Assembly: GCF_964204865.1 (NCBI RefSeq) | Contig: NC_135257.1 | Location: 13,454,001 to 13,518,000 of the forward strand | Direction: 5' to 3' | Length of the DNA stretch: 64,000 nt | Origin: Styela clava | Lineage: Eukaryota | Shown here: piece after piece, positions 54,460-64,000 of the stretch | Layout: every line of letters starts with the position of its first letter | Position numbering within the stretch: position 1 is the first letter of the stretch | The notes under the pieces: model-generated | The model's database searches: none | Seen by the model: the letters and a program-made list of their open reading frames with translations, nothing else | Told to the model about the DNA's origin: nothing | Made by a program: the position numbers and the translations under genes

Positions 54460-55046
54460 GGGCTGGGAATTTCAGGGAAAACACGTTAACTGTTAAACCG
54501 GGTAAAATTAACCGGTTAATCGCAGAGTGATGTTTCACGCATCGAGGTAGTTTCATAATCGCTCTTCTACAAGAGTGGTTCGGACATTTGAAAGTATTTT
54601 AGTAAAACCCGACCCCGTTATTGAATGTCATTTATGTGACGAATATTCAGTGCCTGATGTGCAGATTCTACTTTGAGATATCATAAAGAAAAACAGCATC
54701 AGCTGTACACGTGTTGGATGACATTAAATATATATACGATTTTGCAATAAAATCGTTGATAATGTGTTTCGACCTAAAACTGATTCTGAATTTATCATTG
54801 TCAAATTTTCATAATCAGCAATCCTGATACTTTAATTATTCTCACAACTATTGGGTCATTATCGATACAGTTAGTGATATTCTTTTGAATTAAATGCCAC
54901 ACGAGATAAAATTTAGATGACGTAATCATTTTTGAAAGACTTGTACATTATAAAGACGATTTGCACTTGAGATGTCAGTTAACGGTTAAAAAAATCGTAA
55001 CCGTTAACCATCTAAAATCGATTAACCGGTTAACCATTCCCAGCCC
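54460..55046. mobile_element. MITE with ttaaccggttaa subterminal repeats
   Basis: TIRs gggctgggaat / attcccagccc. Repeated ttaac(c)ggttaa near both ends. TSD unclear. Confidence 0.6.
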
Positions 55047-55679
55047 TTAATATAAGATGTAAAAGAAATATGCAATAAATCTTTGGTTGATTTAAATTTT
55101 AAGACATAAGTAAATAACGAATAGGTTTTGGCAAATAGCCAGAAATTATCAAATTGAAAAGAAACATTAAATTGATTAAAAAATTAATTGGAATCCATGT
55201 CGATAATGATAATACGACGAATACTGTATTTTAAAATGCGGGCGCTTTTGACAAAGTGGCAAATAAAACCTACGAGTCCGAAAATTGGATGCTTAATATG
55301 CTTGAGGCAATTTAAACTAAAAAATTTAGCGATATTTTAGAGCGTCTTGTTATAATATTACTCTATCGGATATATTGCGTTTTGAAAGGTTTTAAAACCA
55401 AAGTAGAGTATATCGTGATCAGGATGGCAAATGAATGTTCGTTTAACAAATTTTGTAATAGTTAGAAATAGAACTCTTTTTTTAATAGAAACTAATGGGG
55501 GGAGAACCATATGCAGATAGAATATTGAGGGATAAAATGTCAGAGTGTAATAAGAACTACAACAGAAATATCGATGGGGTGAAATTTCGGCTTCATAACA
55601 CTTTAAGTTTATTTATCATTGTGTTATTTCTGTCACTTTTATCCATCCTAATTCTAATCAGATATTTTCTTCACAGAGA

Positions 55680-58600
55680 ATGTTCCACTTGAGGACGAAA
55701 AGAAAAATCATTTATACTATTCTAGCATGTGTTCCATTTGCCTTGTTACACTTCATCATCAATAGCAAATTTGCTGATAAAGACAAAAAGTCCTTTTTCG
55801 TGAAAGATACAAGCAAAGAAGATTCGTACGAAGATTTAAACAACGTCAATCGCGAAGAATTGTATTATAGAGTTATGCGTGAAGCAGAAGTGGCATTTCA
55901 GGCCCAAAAGTTGAACTTGACAGTAAAATCTTTTTATAATGATATTTTTCAATTAAGCGACAGCAGAGTTAAATTCTATAGACGCAAAAACTATGACGAA
56001 GTTGAAAATTCATTAGTAAACAAGAGCAGAGTTGAAGATTCGTTCCTAAAATATTTCCCGATGTCTCCAGAAGGTACGGACATATTTGAACTCGCTTCTG
56101 ATAATAATATATGTTCGAATTTGTCAATTTGATGTGGCTTGAATATTTATCAGATTTTCGTAATTGCAATATGTGTACTGTAGAAAGAAAATGCATTTTA
56201 GAGCTTTGTATTCGTTTTGTAATGATCAATCAGAAATGTTATTTGTAATTGTAGTGAGTAATCCCATCATTCCGCCATGTCGCGGGATTGCAGAGGGCTA
56301 TTACGCCTTCGGGTATGAAACAATGCAAACAAAAAAGAAACGATAACCGATCTGTAACTTTCAAAGCTGTACACAAAACAGCGGTTTTACGGCATTGTTG
56401 CATAACAAATTAAAACATTTTATATTGTGGGACCCAATCAAGGACACAACGTGGGACACCATTTGATAAATACTTCTTATTGATTACAGACGCAATCCGT
56501 AGGTTTGGGAGTAAATTACCATACTGGGAGAAATATGAAATTCTAAACTATCCAAAAGTATATTACCTCGGATTGAATGCCAACAAAACTCAATTGAAAG
56601 AAGACGGCAAAAACAATTTTGGATTTGATTTTGATACATTGGTTGAAAACGAATCTGAGGGAAATTATGACGTCAGTGGTCACTATAAAATGGTAAGACA
56701 TAAATATATTAGTTTTGATTATTATTACATGGTGAAGAGAAAACTGCACTTTATATTTTTGCATGTTCTAATCCAGGGGTGCGCAATTACTTTCCAGAGT
56801 GGGCTAGGCTAGTTACACATAATAGACTTGGTTACTAGGCCACAGACTCAAAACTATGAATAAAAACAGTCTATTTACAATAGCAGCTAGGCTAACGTTT
56901 ATATAATAGCAGGAAGCACAATGTGACAATCGGGGTCATTATGACGTTGTTTTTAGCGGGAATTTATAGTATAAAAGTATAGTCGTGATTTCAGCAGACA
57001 CAAGTGGGCCGAATGGAACACTTCGGTGGGCTGGATCCAGCCCGCGGGCCGTAATTTGCCCACCCCTGTTCTAATCTAATCAATTCAATGTTTTTTGTTC
57101 TATTATTTTAAGGTCCCTGGTGATCATATCGGTTACAGATATGAAATTATCAAATACGTTGATACTGGCTATTATTGCGATGTTGTTGTAGCAAGAGACT
57201 GGTCAAATCCAATTTTAAAAAATGTTGCCATTAAAATCATGCGTGTTAGAGGTCACAGGTAACTGAGTCCTAATTAAATACGATAAATCTTTACAGGTAA
57301 ATTTCACTGATATTAATGCATCCGCCGTGGTCGATCTCATGTGCAAAGTTTGTACCCGAAATTTAGAGCAAGAGTTTTTGAAATGGTCACTTCCTTAATA
57401 ACAAAACCCTGATCACCATTCCTGAATCCCGGCAATTAGCGAGAATTTATATATTTCATAAACGCCCATACATTTCGACCAATGAATCAGGGATAGGAAA
57501 AATTGGGTGTTCATTATCTTCGTAGTTTTCTTTCTAACAACCTTGCCCATTGCACAAATTATTAGCCTTGGCATGCTATTTCATTCCAATTATCTATTTG
57601 AAGAACGAGTTCAACTGAGGTCACCAGGGGTCAAAAGGTCACGAAAATCTGAGTGGGGAATCGTATTATCGCTTTGATAGATAAAAAAAAAATGACAGCA
57701 TGGATTAGGTCAAGGTATATATCATCTGTATTATCTTTAAAAGTGCTATGTATGGATGAAATGTCTTTTCCCTCCTTCCGTCACTCTCATATTATTTGGT
57801 TAAAAAAGAACAAAAGGCCACAACTAACATACCACACACCCATTGTTGTGCTCTTCTTAGCTGACCTTTGTAGGCTGGGCGTTTGGCTACGATCAGTAGA
57901 GATTTCCTGCGTTTATGTATAGTTCGCAGATGTTAAATATATCTGGTACATTTACTATGGTAAGTAGCGAAAAACTGACTTTTATTGTTTATCATCATTT
58001 TAATTACCCATAGCCAACGCAAAAACATTTAAATGTGTGATATGCACATTTTCTGGCAATTGGTACTCCGTGCATGTGTCGGCGAAAGTTGTTGACCAGA
58101 CCGTTCTAGTAGAATGTAGATGATTCAAAATGTATAATCTGTCCCGAGACTTCTATTGAGAAAACGTTAGGAACCGAAAATGGACGTGGGATGGGATGGG
58201 ATATGGGATGCACCATCAATTGAGGATGGCGTTGAAAGAAAGCGACTGAAAGTTGTCTGTCACAGTAAATTTTTATATCATCTGAGTAACTCGTGCTACA
58301 AAGCATACACGATAAAATCTCAACTTGAAAGAATTTTAATTTATGTCCGATCTTTGAAAGGGATGCAGATGTTGAAAGAAGTGTTCCAGGGCTGAGGTGC
58401 GAAGCATTTTTTAAGCAAGACGAAAGGGTAGCTAAATATGAGAATGTTCTTAACACACTTTTAAAGTAAAAGTCCTCATATGAACTGAAGGTGAATAGAG
58501 CATTTAGTAAGGCAGGGACTTTATTCGAGGGAACTAGCACTCAATTTATCCTGAATGTCGCACAAAAAAACGAAAATCCTCTTGAAATGCCCCCCTAAAG

Positions 58601-61600
58601 AGAAAAGGCTACACAACATCCTCTCCTCAGTAACGACGTTATGCCCATCGACGTCAAAGAACAACTTCTCCATGTAAAATAAAATGCTGATGAGTCATAC
58701 AAGAAACTTCGAACTGAAAGATTCATAAATGAAAAAATTCGACTTTCATCGTACCAACCTGAAAACAATTACTCCGAGAAAGGTGTACAGAAATTGAGGG
58801 CGAGGCAGCAATTAAGAAAGAAGATGCCCACATGAGACGAAGCTTGCAAATCGCCCAGGAGAAAAGGTTTTATTATGAATGAGCTACTTCAGTGTGATGT
58901 GTGTACAAAGTCCCCTCTACATCATCGACGTTATAAAAAACATTCGCAAACTTCCAAATAAGAATTTCGAAAGATTTGGGCATTTTTCAAATGCATTTTT
59001 GAGTTTTATCGCCTCCTCAACAAAGGGTGCTGAAATAATTGACTTTGAATTTGACTTGTACAAGGAAAGATCGTTGATTCTGAGCGTCAAAGAAGAGCGA
59101 CTGTGGCACCCATAGAAATGCTTTATTGCAAGTCATTTCTACGGACTTAGTGGCGGCATTTTCATTGTTTGTAGGTCAAAGGCGTCTGATGCCACAGTGC
59201 CTTTATCCGACCACAGTGAAAGAAACTGACATGAGATGCAAAGCACGCCGCTAATTAAAGAACAAAACCAAAACATATATATCGTTGTTTTATCATCCGT
59301 TCGGACGTCTTCATCTTGTTTTTCTTACTACCGGAATAAGCTACATAGGGGCGGCCTCAATGAGCTTTGGATTAAAACTGGTGTTAGCAGTTCAACAAGA
59401 ATATTCCTGTGCACATTTTTGCCAGAAAAAATTGGACCTGGTATGTATGATGTCCTTCCTGCTATTCATGCATTAATAACCGGCTGGGAAGGTTTTCTAA
59501 TAAGGGAAGTGACCCTTTTGAAAACTTGTACCCAAATTTCGGGTACAAGTTTTGCACACGAGATCGGCCACAGCTGATACACTATATGCACCTATTATAT
59601 TTTGAAAACATCGCACGTGACACGATGGCACAGAAGGGCCATGTCGTGATTATGTATTCAATAAATGTAAAGCCGACTTTCGTGCATTCACGAACGAATT
59701 TTTCAGTCGGATTCCTAATTTATCGCTAAGTGGTCACTTCACCGACGCTGAATTAATCTTCTTTTAAAGTTTTGTTTTGTGTTTTCAGCACCCTTAGACC
59801 TTTCTGGCAAGAAGTAGGTATGCTGCAGTATCTCAATACCCATGCTTCCGATTTGGATTATTTTACACGCATGTTGGCAACCTTCGAATTTCGCAACCAT
59901 CCCTGTATAGTTTTTGAATTGTTGGGGTTAGTATTAGTCTCAGAAATAAAATACAGTGTATTTTAAAGAAGAGGTATCCTTAATTATTACATTTATTTGT
60001 ATGCTCCCATAATTACATGAGGGAGACCGTGCGCTTTCGGAAAATGTTGTGAAAAAATCTAGTTTGCTACTATTGCATCAATCAATGTCAAATTTTACTA
60101 CTTGAATCCGCTAAAAGGATATATATTCTTTTTTTTCAAGTACGATATTTTACTCAAAATTTTTCTGTTTCATTTAAAATTTAAATCCATTGAACTACTT
60201 TTTATGAAATTTGGCAACACATTTTTCCTAAGCAATTGTTGGCTTATGTCAGGTCGCCGTCACATTTCTCCACCGATCTTTTCAGCAAACTCAACTCAGT
60301 TAAAAAGCTGAGGCGGTACGTGTCCATCCATATATTTGAGCATTGCTCTATTAATCTGATTTACTAAAATGCTTAATGAATAGATAACATGTTATGTATT
60401 TGCTAAACATAGCATGATATCTATTTGGATGCAGAATTATTTTACTTTTACATGCATTTTTTACTTACCAAACTTTAATGTACTTCACAGAGGAACTATT
60501 GACTTAAAATATTTGAAACACTCCGTGCGAAACACAACATTGATACGAAGATATGCAAGTGATGCTTTGCATGGTTTGCGTATTCTCAACAGAATCGGCG
60601 TGTTGCACGGAGATTTTAAACTGGTAAATGCAATATATTGTCACATGCTGAATAATCATTGTTAATTACAATTTTACTATAGTGTGTAATCTGCCCTGAT
60701 AGTGATAATTAGCAACTTTATCTCAATGAGAAACGACACTTTGGAAATTCACTGGTGCATAATGCATCAGTTTTGTGCTCTTGGCATTTGAGTTTTCGCT
60801 AGTAGTGGTTTTTCGTTAGTTTGCTTATATGTCTCTGTGTAGCAACAACACTTGAAACATAAAAGAACTCCATACAAATCCATACTGTTGGTTGTAGTTG
60901 GCTTGTGTATATATGTAAAGATTCTCTGATCACTAATAACTATAGTGCCTGAATATGTATATATTTATATATATTCTCTATGATTAAGCTTGCAAGATTA
61001 TTCGCTAATCCATCCAAGTTCGCGTTGCTATTAACTAATATTGTCTGCTTATTTGGTAATATGCGCTAAAAGTTTATAAAACGGGTCGAGGCTTGAGACA
61101 AAGAGCCGCGATGACATTGGGTGCGAAACTGTCTCAAGGCCAGCTTCTTTTGATAATAGCAGAAAAAAATATACGCTGTGCTAAAACATAGCGGGAATTA
61201 AATTTTTCTATATGTTTTCAGCATAACCTGATGTATATTCATGGAAAAAATAATGAAAGCAATGGACAATTGATAAAAATAGGGGATTTTGGAGGAAGCT
61301 GCGTTGTTGGTCAACCAAGTATGTCTTTCTGAGATTATGATATTAAAAGTTATATCATTAGATTTTTGGTGCACAAAGTTCATGAATATAACGAATTTTT
61401 AAACTATTGTTAGAATGAACTAAAAAAATGATATGAAATGCTTATGAAACTGAATTTTTATCTTTTTATAGAATGTGGAATTCGGTATTACTTTATTACT
61501 CGAGCCTATCGTGCTCCTGAAATAATTTTCAACCTTCAACACACAACTCAGATTGACATGTTCAGTTTTGGGGTTTGGCTGGCAGAACTGTTTTTGGGTC

Positions 61601-63163
61601 AGCCCCCATTTTATGGTGAAGATAATGAGGAAGATCATTTAGGAGCAATGATGGAAGTACTCGGGCTTCCTCCAAGTCATATGATTGCAAAGTCACCTAG
61701 GAAGCACATATACTGGGGTAACTACATTGATAAACTTTATCTAGGCCAGTGGTTCTCAACCTTTTATGGCTCGTGGCCCCCTGTTCTCCATTCCAAAAAC
61801 ATTAACGTGTTGGATTGTATTATGTTTTTATTACCTTTTACGGAATGCAAAAGCAAACCACGGACAAGAAAGTAAGAGTTTTCTAGTATACAATCAATGG
61901 GAATCGCTCGGGACTGTCTGACGAATAACGAATAAGTTGCAAATCGCAACTTGCGACAAATGAACTAGCAGTGAAGAAGCTTTCTTTCTTAGTAGTGGGT
62001 AAGAATTTGATATGCCACCTCAAAGTTGCATTCAAAAGCGGGCTTTTCCTCCGGCGAAACTCGAACTTGGCCAATGTTGCCTTATTGTCAATCTAATTTG
62101 CTTGGCAGCCAAGAATATCAACGCTTTCACCCGGTGATGATTTTTGTCACGGTGATTTTGGAGTTTAGATGGACTTAATGATTCATTGCTCATTACATTC
62201 GAGAAATGCAAGTATTGAGGACATTCTCTGTCATCTCGATTTACTTTGGTAAAACCAAAGTAAATGTCGTTCCATTTTCGTATTTTGGCCATTAGGAATT
62301 TTTACAAATGGGTTATTCCGTCTATAGTACGATAGCGAAGGTTATCTCGCAGTCTAGTGAAACTACAGGTTAGACGGCCTACCAGCGAACTATTTTGATT
62401 GGTAGATTGCAAATTCCATTATGATCAAACAATTCACACACAAGAAAGTGAATACATATTAACCTATTCAGGCACTTAAACTGCGGCGAACACCTCAACA
62501 GAGAATTTTATTATAAAAGGAAAGTGTGCAAACGAAATCGTTTTAGGATCAATTATTAGCCTTGTGTCATTCATTGGCCCATTGTGTCATTCATGGCCCC
62601 CCTTGAACTTGGGATTCAGGGATTTTCCAACCTAATTATTTCTTTTGAATTTTCATCTTTGCTTTCTTTATATATATGTTTGTCTAGATGCCTTTCGACA
62701 CAAAATTCACGATAAAGGAACGTATCGAAGGCCTTATAGTAGACCATTGTTGAAAGTTTTGGAAGGAATGGACTTCGTGTTAATTGACCTGATTTGCAGA
62801 TGCCTCGAGTAAGTTTTGTTGAAAATCATTTAAAACGTTGTGTATTTTGTTTGTGATTGGGTTTCGTACGTTTGAATGTAAAAAAAAGAAAACATTTGTG
62901 TATGTCTAGTCACCTCATAGATCAGACTACATATTTTTTTTGTGCTTTTCCGTGCGTACTTATCCAGATACTATGTTATGGCGACACCATAAAATTAAGT
63001 TTAGGATCTAAGAACTTGGTGATTCATAAACCTCATGTACAGATGGGACCCTAACCTACGCATAACACCTGAAGAAGCACTTCGTCATCCTTCTATGACT
63101 GGAGTAGAGAAAGATTTGGAAGAATATCCAATAGTCATCCAACGATTTCTAGGGAAAATTTAA
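55680..63163 (+). CDS. Divergent class-2 DYRK (DYRK2/3/4)-like kinase with an N-terminal signal anchor; 9 coding exons
   Basis: Exons 55680-56073, 56490-56692, 57113-57258, 59789-59926, 60491-60623, 61222-61318, 61472-61717, 62688-62808 and 63043-63163 join in frame via GT-AG. Motifs: NAPA-like PMSPEDAI...EILNYPKVYYLG, GHYKMVPGDHIGYRYE, VAIK, QEV, HGDFKLHN, DFG, YRAPE, IDMFSFG, RCLEWDPNLRITPEEALRHP. Confidence 0.88.
56774..57068. mobile_element. hAT (Charlie-like) MITE in kinase intron 2
   Basis: TIRs caggggtgcgcaa / ttgcccacccctg. Perfect 8-bp TSD TTCTAATC. Confidence 0.88.
57436..59729 (+). mobile_element. Decayed Academ-like (XPG-containing) DNA transposon in kinase intron 3
   Basis: Frame-broken remnants KCIICP, YHLSNSCYKAYT and LWIKTG...EKIGPGMYDVLPAIHAL.TG (XPG/H3TH-like). 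Possible TIRs ttagcgagaattta / taatttatcgctaa. No TSD confirmed. Confidence 0.45.
61747..62605 (-). mobile_element. Truncated hAT Buster/Charlie element with a decayed transposase N-terminus, in kinase intron 7
   Basis: Terminus cagtggttctcaacc...ggccccc. MAKIRKWNDIYFGFT...CPQ...VMSNESLSPSKLQNH resembles the ZBED5/8 Buster BED-finger region. Confidence 0.7.
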
Positions 63164-63585
63164 TGTTGAAACTTGGTAAACGAAATTCGCAGCAGACGGA
63201 GGTGAATCGCCGCTCAGTGCGCTGGGATTTCAGATTCAAATATTTATTTTCGTCATGCAAAAACAATGTGCGATATGAAAAAAGAATAAATAATATAATG
63301 TAACAAAATGACGAACGGATATCGGCTTGTTGCAGTTGAGACGGGGTCGCGAAAAGACTCAGAGCGTCATCTAGTCAGCTGCTTTTTAAAAGTATCGGTA
63401 AAGAGATTAAGCCTAGTTTATCACAACTATTTCCACACTAATTTTTTACATGTTTTGTGTATGAAATATATAATTTTGCAATGAATAATAATTGCTTCCA
63501 CATCGGACCAGCGGGGATTGGCAGGACAAAGTTAGATGGTGTGATAGTTGCCATACTAAGGACAGGTAATTGATTTCTGTTTAGA

Positions 63586-63979
63586 ATGTTCAATTGATCA
63601 CAAGAAGCGACATTTGATTTATTCAATGCCGCTAAGGTGGTAAACTTAGTGGAAAAGAGCGACAGTACGGCAGTATGAAAAGTGGTGGTTATGAAGGAGG
63701 TGGCCAGAATGTTAGTGGAGAAAGGATATGACGAAATAGATGTGTAAATTTTGCAGTAAAATAGAAATGTAGAAAAACAAGTATATATAAATAAGAATAC
63801 TGATTTTTTCATGTTGCTTGAATAGAGTTACTGTGAAGAATAAGTGGAAGCGGCTGAAGGCCAAATATAACAGCATAAGAACCAAAACATCACAATCTGC
63901 ACAAAGCTCCAGGTCAGCTTTAGCATGGCCCTATTTCAGGGCCATGCATGAGCTTCTTGGCTGTAGACCAAAAGTGCAG
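63586..63979 (+). pseudogene. Myb/SANT-like (trihelix) DNA-binding domain pseudogene, probably from a Harbinger transposon; runs off the window
   Basis: MFN*SQEATFDLF...V*KVVVMKEVARMLVEKGYDEIDV | VTVKNKWKRLKAKY...WPYFRAMHELLGCRPKVQ. Intron 63744-63825; two in-frame TGA stops. Confidence 0.7.
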
Positions 63980-64000
63980 GTGAGGTCGCAATTAGTAAAT

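What the first reader, a model, noticed from the sequence alone, without database searches (positions are those of the whole stretch)
55680..63163. DYRK-derived kinase with a type II signal anchor: candidate luminal/secreted CMGC kinase
Seen: the protein starts MFHLRTKRK-IIYTILACVPFALLHFII-NSK (basic stretch, then ~18 hydrophobic residues). A ~100-aa stem follows, then NAPA/DH-box-like segments and a full kinase domain. It has six N-x-S/T sequons (NLT, NKS, NKT, NES, NTT, NES). The catalytic VAIK, alphaC Glu, HxDxKxxN and DFG are all retained. Known: DYRKs are soluble nuclear/cytosolic kinases. This N-terminal layout is typical of Golgi type II enzymes, and recognised secretory kinases (Fam20C, VLK/PKDCC, POMK, Four-jointed) are not CMGC kinases. 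Inference: an independent recruitment of a DYRK fold to the secretory pathway, perhaps phosphorylating extracellular/tunic proteins or glycans.
Basis: partly seen in the sequence, partly recalled or inferred. Interest (0 to 1): 0.8.

Follow-up and report, generated by a model that had tools for sequence, protein, structure and literature searches.

The report
Membrane-anchored DYRK kinase family in a sea squirt
This sea-squirt (Styela clava) gene encodes a DYRK2/3-type kinase that has gained a short basic tail and a membrane-spanning segment at its start; it belongs to a family of at least ten such genes, and the sequence predicts, but does not prove, that the kinase works inside the secretory pathway, which is not known for kinases of this group.

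Summary
Window 55680-63163 (+) is a phase-consistent nine-exon coding region, and it equals the RefSeq Styela clava protein XP_077971394.1, "DYRK3-like". Its product starts MFHLRTKRK, followed by a 20-residue uncharged core, a poorly conserved stem, the NAPA/DH-box region and a full kinase domain. Human DYRK3 and DYRK2 are its closest solved relatives.

There are two corrections. The tandem paralogue has a frameshift in that stretch, and the exon does not change the predicted topology. A tempting 30-nt microexon (60286-60315) is not used.

The gene is not unique. S. clava has at least ten genes with this N-terminus, and two transcripts from another species carry it too. All form one clade, and soluble-type DYRK2/4 genes are kept as well. 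All 12 N-termini have an acid-free tail of +4 to +6 and a 15-26-residue core, and all predict N-terminus in, kinase out.

Features shared by the family:
- an ANK[T/S] glycosylation sequon (13/13 copies, against 0/15 canonical DYRKs);
- loss of the HCD cysteine;
- a new activation-loop cysteine.

A luminal location is the best-supported reading (about 0.55) but is untested. This scan had already noted the same architecture in the chromosome-3 cluster.

The parts
55495..55578 (+). Upstream exon of the RefSeq model (MGGEPYADRILRDKMSECNKNYNRNIDG). It has a GT donor at 55579 and is spliced to the acceptor at 55675/6. It is probably 5' leader or an optional N-terminal extension.
   Evidence: The N-terminus of P0124/P0003 matches ORF 55495... 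In the tandem copy the same stretch carries a 1-nt deletion and TAC>TAA, so it is not conserved as coding. No RNA contig covered it in four runs.
55677..56073 (+). Exon holding the conserved start codon (55680). It encodes the basic tail (55680-55706), the uncharged membrane core IIYTILACVPFALLHFIINS (55707-55766) and the stem with sequons NLT and NKS (55767-56073).
   Evidence: The joint 56071/3 > 56488/90 (GT..AG) is seen in the RNA contig of the paralogue. Paralogue exons are 84% and 38-54% identical with the layout kept.
56490..56692 (+). NAPA2/DH-box exon. It carries the family-invariant sequon ANKT (NKT = 56582-56590) and, in this gene, a 13-aa insertion holding NES.
   Evidence: It aligns to the DYRK2/DYRK3 NAPA region. 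ANK[T/S] is present in 13/13 family copies and in 0/15 canonical DYRKs.
57113..57258 (+). Exon with the degenerate glycine loop (VDTGYYCDV) and the VAIK lysine.
   Evidence: Joint 56691>57112 appears in two RNA contigs.
59789..59926 (+). Exon with the alphaC Glu (FWQEVGML) through beta5 (HPCIVFELLG).
   Evidence: A contig of run X4 with one mismatch covers it, so this gene itself is transcribed.
60491..60623 (+). Exon from alphaD-alphaE to the catalytic loop HGDFKL, with sequon NTT. It is joined directly to 59926.
   Evidence: Joint 59927>60492 with no letters between. P0124 reads FELLGGTIDL.
61222..61318 (+). Exon with HN of the catalytic loop, the family-specific insert GKNNESNGQ (sequon NES) and DFGGSC.
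61472..61717 (+). Exon with the activation loop (new Cys; Tyr and both Arg kept), YRAPE and the C-lobe.
   Evidence: Pfam Pkinase 2.7e-12. The best solved relative is DYRK3 at 1.9e-16.
62688..62808 (+). Exon with a shortened CMGC insert and the start of the LICRCLEWDP helix.
63043..63163 (+). Last exon, WDPNLRITPEEALRHP ... QRFLGKI, ending in stop codon TAA at 63161-63163.

Best explanation
The gene encodes a catalytically competent kinase derived from class II DYRKs. It is inserted into the ER membrane by an uncleaved N-terminal signal anchor. The short polybasic tail stays in the cytosol. The stem, NAPA region and kinase domain face the lumen of the ER/Golgi, or the cell exterior (type II topology).

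It is one member of a lineage-specific family: at least 10 genes in Styela clava, with orthologues in at least one other species. The family arose once from a soluble DYRK2/3/4-like ancestor.

Shown here: the gene model, its DYRK ancestry, the conserved anchor layout, the retained catalytic residues, and transcription and splicing of the near-identical paralogue.

Inferred: the orientation, from the charge rule and conserved sequons; Golgi or ER residence, from the short core and polybasic tail; kinase activity; and any substrate.
For: Gene and ancestry:
- The exon model equals RefSeq P0124.
- DYRK3 and DYRK2 are the best sequence matches (2e-59, aligned from the NAPA region) and the best fold matches (3k2l, 5y86).

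Anchor:
- All 12 family N-termini have M, then a 9-11-aa tail with net charge +4 to +6 and no Asp or Glu. Positions 5, 7 and 9 are basic or His.
- The uncharged core is 15-26 aa (16-20 in ten of the twelve N-termini).
- The charge difference (C-flank minus N-flank) is negative in 12/12, from -1 to -7.
- The core sequence itself has diverged (34-38% identity) while its hydrophobic character is kept.
- No second hydrophobic segment exists.
- AlphaFold models residues 28-58 as one helix, followed by a disordered stem.

Family-specific changes that fit a luminal setting:
- The ANK[T/S] sequon is present in 13/13 copies, toggling between S and T. Canonical DYRKs have A[K/C/H/R]K[I/R] in 0/15, including S. 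clava's own DYRK2.
- Stem sequons persist at two places despite low sequence conservation there (5 of 6 sequences each).
- The family-specific insert before DFG carries N-x-S/T in 8/13.
- Sequons total 35 observed against 23 expected in the family, and 70 against 75 in canonical DYRKs.
- The HCD cysteine is lost in all members, and a new activation-loop Cys lies 8-11 residues after the DFG+3 Cys in 7/7.

Single origin: the anchored proteins form one clade with 100/100 support.

RNA: a spliced contig joins the anchor exon to the kinase exons in the tandem copy.

No paper on an anchored or secreted DYRK was found.
Against: - There is no direct evidence of location, glycosylation or activity.
- In several members, including this gene (+2), the C-flank is also positive, so the charge margin is modest.
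- Overall sequon enrichment is weak, and the family members are not independent samples.
- Four ancestral, probably buried cysteines remain, and no clear new disulfide pair is proven.
- The glycine loop is degenerate in this gene (DTGYYC).
- RNA evidence does not cover the start codon or the membrane-core codons of this gene.
- RefSeq's in-frame upstream ATG could give a 38-aa tail.
- SignalP and DeepTMHMM were not available.
Confidence: 0.55

Rival explanations
1. The protein is a membrane-tethered kinase that faces the cytosol. The hydrophobic segment anchors it to the ER, Golgi, mitochondrial outer membrane or another organelle, with the N-terminus translocated or the segment dipping into the bilayer. 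The DYRK domain then acts on cytosolic substrates at a membrane surface.
For: All known DYRKs act in the cytosol or nucleus, and CMGC kinases are enriched in the nucleus (PMC8175086). The ancestral cysteines and the NAPA auto-activation region are retained. Several members have positive residues just after the core, as outer-membrane signal anchors do, and moderate core hydrophobicity of 1.6-2.0. Overall sequon enrichment is weak.
Against: The conserved, acid-free tail of +4 to +6 would have to cross the membrane. The charge difference is negative in 12/12. The C-flank ranges from -3 to +5, so it is not consistently positive. Several cores are very hydrophobic (2.3-2.9). This reading leaves unexplained the family-invariant ANK[T/S] sequon, the persisting stem sequons and the loss of the HCD Cys.
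Confidence: 0.27
2. The N-terminal segment is a cleavable signal peptide rather than an anchor, and the kinase is released as a soluble luminal or secreted protein.
For: The n-region and h-region layout fits a signal peptide. Two members have small residues at positions -3 and -1 after the core: AKA in P0005 and GIA in P0006.
Against: An uncharged core of mostly 16-20 aa is long for a signal-peptide h-region. There is no consistent -3/-1 site across members, and none in this gene. The strongly conserved tail motif suggests a part that is retained and functional.
Confidence: 0.08
3. The segment directs mitochondrial import. The short basic tail acts like a presequence and the core as a stop-transfer signal. 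The kinase would then sit in the intermembrane space, or be held on the outer membrane as PINK1 is.
For: The tails are basic, acid-free and start like presequences, for example MLSFRRSRRF and MLRLKAKTKVR.
Against: Only 9-11 residues precede the core, far shorter than typical presequences (my own knowledge). Conserved sequons have no role in mitochondria. The RefSeq extension in this gene adds acidic residues.
Confidence: 0.07
4. The anchor is an annotation artefact. The exon is untranslated or mis-joined, and the real protein is a soluble DYRK.
For: RNA contigs did not cover the start codon of this gene.
Against: The exon is joined to the kinase exons in a spliced contig of the 84-91% identical tandem copy. 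The open frame, start position and layout are conserved in 12 genes or transcripts, including two independent transcript assemblies from another species.
Confidence: 0.03

Closest known systems
Class II DYRKs (human DYRK2, DYRK3, DYRK4; PDB 3k2l, 5y86)
   Same: The NAPA region and kinase domain align from residue about 151 to the end (E 2e-59, 31-33% identity). The VAIK Lys, alphaC Glu, catalytic Asp/Lys/Asn, DFG, the activation-loop Tyr with its two Arg, the CMGC Arg and the LEWDP helix are all kept.
   Different: An N-terminal basic tail, membrane core and stem have been added. HCD has become HGD, and the glycine loop is reduced to one Gly. There is a 5-aa insert before DFG, an activation-loop insert with a new Cys, a shortened CMGC insert and a new ANK[T/S] sequon. 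A long branch separates the family from canonical DYRK2/4.
Secretory-pathway kinases (Fam20A/B/C, VLK/PKDCC, POMK, FAM69/DIPK, Four-jointed)
   Same: They share the predicted architecture: a signal peptide or type II anchor followed by a luminal kinase-like domain. POMK is a type II membrane protein (PMC9941534). Atypical nucleotide-loop motifs are common among them (my own knowledge).
   Different: There is no sequence or fold kinship. Pfam and PDB searches return only Pkinase/DYRK. Those families are atypical kinases, whereas this is a canonical CMGC fold. Luminal location is not shown here.
Golgi type II enzymes (glycosyltransferases, sulfotransferases)
   Same: They share a short polybasic cytosolic tail, a short (about 16-20 aa) aromatic-rich membrane core, a fast-evolving stem of variable length (about 100 to 330 aa here) and a C-terminal catalytic domain. 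Basic tail residues promote ER export of such enzymes (PMC3014094, title and abstract).
   Different: The catalytic domain is a protein kinase. No Golgi localisation data exist.
PINK1 and Tom20/Tom70-type N-terminally anchored mitochondrial proteins
   Same: They have an N-terminal membrane segment followed by a large C-terminal domain, which in PINK1 is a kinase.
   Different: Those proteins face the cytosol, and they rely on a long presequence or a positive C-flank (my own knowledge). Here the tail is 9-11 aa and the C-flank charge is inconsistent.

Membership tests
Class II DYRK (DYRK2/3/4) | Kinase domain closest to DYRK2/3/4 by sequence and by fold | tested here: met
   DYRK3 2.3e-59 and DYRK2 1.9e-56 rank ahead of DYRK1A at 3e-34. 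Foldseek top hits are 3k2l, 8hlt and 5y86. Exon 8 alone gives DYRK3 at 1.9e-16.
Class II DYRK (DYRK2/3/4) | NAPA region and DH box N-terminal to the kinase domain | tested here: met
   The alignment to DYRK2/3 starts at FPMSPEDAIRRF...YPKVYYLGLNA. The DH box is recognisable but degenerate and interrupted by a 13-aa insert in this gene.
Class II DYRK (DYRK2/3/4) | Activation-loop YxY tyrosine with its phosphate-binding arginines | tested here: met
   IRYYFITRAYRAPE aligns to YTYIQSRFYRSPE, with the second Tyr and both Arg kept. They are lost in the cluster member P0133.
Class II DYRK (DYRK2/3/4) | Signature motifs GxGxxG and HCDLKPEN | tested here: not met
   The motifs read DTGYYC and HGDFKLHN here. 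The catalytic Asp, Lys and Asn are kept, but the Cys is lost in every family member tested.
Class II DYRK (DYRK2/3/4) | Soluble cytosolic or nuclear protein without a membrane segment | tested here: not met
   There is an N-terminal uncharged core of 20 aa with mean Kyte-Doolittle hydropathy 1.93. The feature is conserved in 12/12 family N-termini. Actual localisation cannot be tested here.
Type II (N-in/C-out) signal-anchor membrane proteins | A single N-terminal hydrophobic segment with a more positive N-flank than C-flank, and no later membrane segment | tested here: met
   The charge difference is -3 for this gene and negative in 12/12. The next-best hydrophobic windows are kinase-core helices. 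This is a prediction only.
Type II (N-in/C-out) signal-anchor membrane proteins | Luminal domain carries used N-glycosylation sites and/or disulfides | tested here: inconclusive
   The conserved ANK[T/S] (13/13), the stem sequons and the insert sequon (8/13) argue for it. Overall enrichment is weak (35 against 23 expected). One new conserved Cys lies near the DFG+3 Cys, but no disulfide is shown.
Secretory-pathway kinases (Fam20, PKDCC/VLK, POMK, FAM69) | Homology to one of these families | tested here: not met
   Pfam gives only Pkinase and PK_Tyr_Ser-Thr. The PDB sequence and fold searches give DYRKs.
Secretory-pathway kinases (Fam20, PKDCC/VLK, POMK, FAM69) | Experimentally luminal or secreted, phosphorylating secretory cargo or glycans | not testable with these tools
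   This needs localisation, glycosidase and protease-protection assays.
Mitochondrial outer-membrane signal-anchored proteins | Moderately hydrophobic core with net positive charge within a few residues of its C-terminal end | tested here: inconclusive
   This gene has NSKFADKDKK (+2 over 15 residues). Across the family the flank runs from -3 to +5, and several cores are strongly hydrophobic.

The most novel reading that the evidence does not exclude
Stolidobranch ascidians evolved, from a soluble DYRK2/3/4 gene, a multigene family of canonical-fold CMGC kinases that act in the Golgi or ER lumen or outside the cell. This would be the first secretory-pathway kinases from the CMGC group. It would be a case of a cytosolic kinase adapting to an oxidising, glycosylating compartment through loss of the HCD Cys, a new activation-loop Cys, gained sequons and a relaxed glycine loop.
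Probability: 0.5. Interest if true: 0.8.

Novelty: new variant of a known kind. Interest (0 to 1): 0.62.

Why it matters
Known secretory-pathway kinases (Fam20, VLK, POMK, FAM69) are atypical families, whereas CMGC kinases are textbook cytosolic or nuclear enzymes. A DYRK domain placed behind a conserved type II-like anchor, and expanded to at least ten genes, would show that a standard eukaryotic protein kinase can be moved into the secretory pathway. It would also offer a natural series of intermediates, from members with an intact glycine loop to this gene, for studying what such a move requires.

If the cytosol-facing reading is right instead, membrane-tethered DYRKs would still be new for the family. 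The proteins are already in RefSeq as "DYRK2/3/4-like", and those names do not mention the anchor.

Tried and rejected
- Exon-by-exon Pfam scan: only the 81-aa exon 8 reached significance, because the other exons are too short.
- The 30-nt microexon at 60286-60315 looked phase-perfect, but both the RNA contig and RefSeq reject it.
- Whole-library HMMER search with exon 1: it returned only the gene's own cluster plus one spurious repeat protein. The tail and stem region therefore has no detectable relatives outside the lineage.
- Read laying, single call of 6,000 letters: the informative contig belongs to the tandem paralogue and stops short of the membrane-core codons. The start codon of this gene therefore remains without RNA proof.
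I could not read the 5' UTRs of the two foreign transcripts or learn their species.
- Overall sequon enrichment is too weak to carry the argument alone.
- A C-terminal KDEL-like signal is absent: the C-terminus reads ..QRFLGKI.
- A consistent signal-peptidase site is absent.
- Literature searches for anchored or secreted DYRK or CMGC kinases found nothing relevant.
- I never typed or searched a joined spliced sequence. Exons were searched one by one, and all full-length work used database proteins returned by the tools (P0124 and others).
Full report
**The sequence and gene model.** Reading 55000-64000 and its ORFs gives a phase-consistent gene on the + strand. ATG 55680 opens an exon ending at 56073 (131 codons plus 1 nt). 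The following exons are 56490-56692, 57113-57258, 59789-59926, 60491-60623, 61222-61318, 61472-61717, 62688-62808 and 63043-63163 (TAA), all with GT..AG borders. Full-length analyses used proteins that the databases returned.

**The organism and the public annotation.** The organism is Styela clava. RefSeq XP_077971394.1 (P0124, 561 aa), which lies on a contig of exactly the window contig's length, equals my exon translations from MFHLRT to the stop. The gene is therefore already annotated, as "DYRK3-like".

The membrane segment then starts at residue 39.
  - The tandem paralogue is 95% identical in this upstream DNA, but it has a 1-nt deletion and a TAC>TAA change there. Its RefSeq protein starts at MFYLKTKSR (P0125).
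  - All other family members start with Met at the same position before the basic motif.
  - So 55680 is the conserved start, and the extension is at most a gene-specific lengthening of the tail.
- A 30-nt stretch at 60286-60315 has perfect borders and phase. Neither the RNA contig (joint 59927>60492) nor RefSeq (FELLGGTIDL) uses it.

**RNA evidence.** Four runs of the same species held part of the gene. I laid them on 55000-60999, which is 6,000 letters as prescribed.
- Run X2 gave a 1,219-nt contig joining 55762-56071 | 56488-56691 | 57112-57256 | 59810-59927 | 60492-60623 and running on into the next exon.
- Its differences from the window (K>R, D>A, N>K, K>E in exon 1, and the 23 letters that read GTSRFYWR) are those of the tandem paralogue. 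It therefore proves that the anchor exon is spliced to the kinase exons in the 84-91% identical neighbour, not in this gene.
- The contig begins just after the codons for the membrane core, so neither start codon is covered.
- A short X4 contig with one mismatch shows that this gene's exon 59789-59926 is transcribed, there joined to an alternative exon at 57658-57714.

**What the kinase is.**
- Exon 8 alone hits Pfam Pkinase, and its best solved relatives are DYRK3, DYRK1A and DYRK2, ahead of GSK3.
- Full-length P0003, an allele of this gene, aligns to human DYRK3 and DYRK2 from FPMSPEDAIRRF, which is the NAPA region, to the C-lobe (2e-59).
- The AlphaFold model has mean pLDDT 71, with the kinase core at 80-97. 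It matches DYRK2 and DYRK3 structures best.
- Kept: the VAIK Lys, the alphaC Glu, the Asp, Lys and Asn of the catalytic loop, DFG, the activation-loop Tyr with both Arg, and YRAPE. Changed: the glycine loop is DTGYYC and HCD is HGD.
- S. clava also keeps ordinary DYRK2-like (C8) and DYRK4-like (C1) genes with GKGSFG, HCD and AKKRQG. The anchored genes are therefore additional, derived copies.

**It is a family.** Searching the genome exon by exon found:
- a tandem copy 22.7 kb downstream;
- a third gene at C9:17.35 Mb;
- a cluster at C3:16.95-17.05 Mb.

Scanning for the N-terminal layout found a matching first exon upstream of each of seven cluster genes, on the correct strand.

Protein searches added RefSeq models (P0004, P0006, P0012/P0133) and two transcript-derived proteins (P0005, P0007). 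These two match S. clava exons at no more than 68% and 83% identity, so they come from another species.

In a tree, the anchored proteins form one clade (100/100) on a long branch from canonical DYRK2/4. P0005 is sister to the C9 genes and P0007 is sister to P0006, so the family had diversified before the species split.

The profile search shows a score gap from 459 bits (P0012) to 319 bits (canonical DYRKs of other phyla). It returned no named tunicate other than Styela. The whole-library search with exon 1 found nothing outside its own cluster.

**The anchor.** All 12 N-termini share this layout:
- Met;
- a 9-11-residue tail with net charge +4 to +6, no acidic residue, and basic or His residues at positions 5, 7 and 9 (often M-x-C-F/W-R-x-K-x-K-x-R);
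- an uncharged core of 15-26 residues (16-20 in ten of the twelve), rich in F, Y, C, S and T;
- a stem of very variable length and sequence, about 100 aa here and about 330 aa in P0006.

The charge difference between the 15 residues after the core and the tail is negative in all 12, and is -3 for this gene. By the established charge-difference (positive-inside) rule this predicts a cytosolic N-terminus and a translocated C-terminus. No other segment is hydrophobic enough to span a membrane. That the tail is better conserved than the core or the stem suggests it is read by cytosolic machinery. This last point is inference.

**Signs of a luminal setting.**
- The motif ANK[T/S] in the NAPA2 region is a glycosylation sequon in 13/13 family copies, alternating between S and T. 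Fourteen canonical DYRKs and S. clava's own DYRK2 have A[K/C/H/R]K[I/R] there.
- In the poorly conserved stem, a sequon persists at two places in 5 of 6 sequences each, while control motifs show no such clusters there.
- The family-specific 5-aa insert before DFG carries N-x-S/T in 8/13.
- Sequons total 35 against 23 expected from composition in the family, and 70 against 75 in canonical DYRKs.
- The HCD cysteine is lost in every member. A new cysteine appears in the activation loop 8-11 residues after the DFG+3 cysteine. A disulfide between these two is only an idea.

None of this is proof. The family members are related, this gene's C-flank is also positive (+2), and localisation predictors and experiments were not available.

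**Rival readings.**
- A cytosol-facing tether (ER, Golgi or mitochondrial outer membrane) is the main rival, at 0.27. It fits DYRK biology, but it requires translocating a conserved polybasic tail and leaves the conserved sequons unexplained.
- A cleaved signal peptide (0.08) lacks a consistent cleavage site.
- Mitochondrial import (0.07) is unlikely with a 9-11-aa tail.
- An annotation artefact (0.03) is excluded in practice by conservation in 12 genes or transcripts and by the spliced contig.

**Comparison with what is known.** The protein works as a DYRK-fold kinase, and by descent it is a class II DYRK. It fails two signature motifs (GxGxxG, HCD) and the soluble architecture. It resembles Golgi type II enzymes and secretory kinases such as POMK in layout only (PMC9941534) and has no homology to them. 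The human kinome map places CMGC kinases mainly in the nucleus (PMC8175086). I found no paper on an anchored or secreted DYRK.

**Earlier notes from this scan.** The scan had already noted the same architecture in the C3 cluster (s1-813310) and the loss of the activation Tyr and Arg in some cluster members (s1-813382). I found the cluster's N-termini independently and saw the Tyr/Arg loss in P0133.

**Verdict.** It is a new variant of a known kind.

Noticed in passing
window 60286-60315: This 30-nt stretch has AG/GT borders and the correct phase (KLNSVKKLR), so it looks like a microexon. It is skipped in the RNA contig and in RefSeq.
   Followed up: yes
window 57658-57714: A low-depth contig of run X4 splices this stretch inside intron 3 (GT donor) to exon 59789-59926. 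It may be an alternative or poison exon of this gene. It contains stop codons in several frames.
   Followed up: partly
window 56790-57070 and 55000-55047: The first is a short element in intron 2 with terminal inverted repeats (CAGGGGTGCGCAAT ... ATTTGCCCACCCCTG). The second is another repeat upstream of the gene. Both are covered by many unrelated RNA contigs in all four runs, so they are dispersed MITE-like repeats.
   Followed up: no
G000 C3:16983452 (L037 3452-3598): One cluster copy has an in-frame stop in its NAPA exon (FGK*LSP). It is probably a pseudogene within the C3 cluster.
   Followed up: no
G000 C3:16955534, 16990597, 17010804 (L026, L028, L029): Some cluster members read DFD or DFA instead of DFG, and HSD or HMD instead of HCD. 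P0133 has also lost the activation Tyr and one Arg. Part of the family may consist of pseudokinases.
   Followed up: partly
P0001 (XP_039272066.1), tandem copy: RefSeq isoform X2 of the tandem paralogue skips the 246-nt activation-loop/C-lobe exon in frame (450 aa instead of 532 aa). That isoform would be catalytically dead.
   Followed up: no
C-termini of P0124, P0125, P0004, P0005, P0006, P0007: The extreme C-terminus is conserved, reading [E/x]xP[I/L/P]x[I/M][Q/K]R[F/L]xG[K/E][I/L/V]-COOH. Canonical DYRKs and P0133 lack it. Its function is unknown.
   Followed up: no
window 58106-58540 (- strand), intron 3: A 144-aa ORF and several other ORFs lie in the 2.5-kb intron 3. They look like remnants of an inserted element. 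I did not examine them.
   Followed up: no
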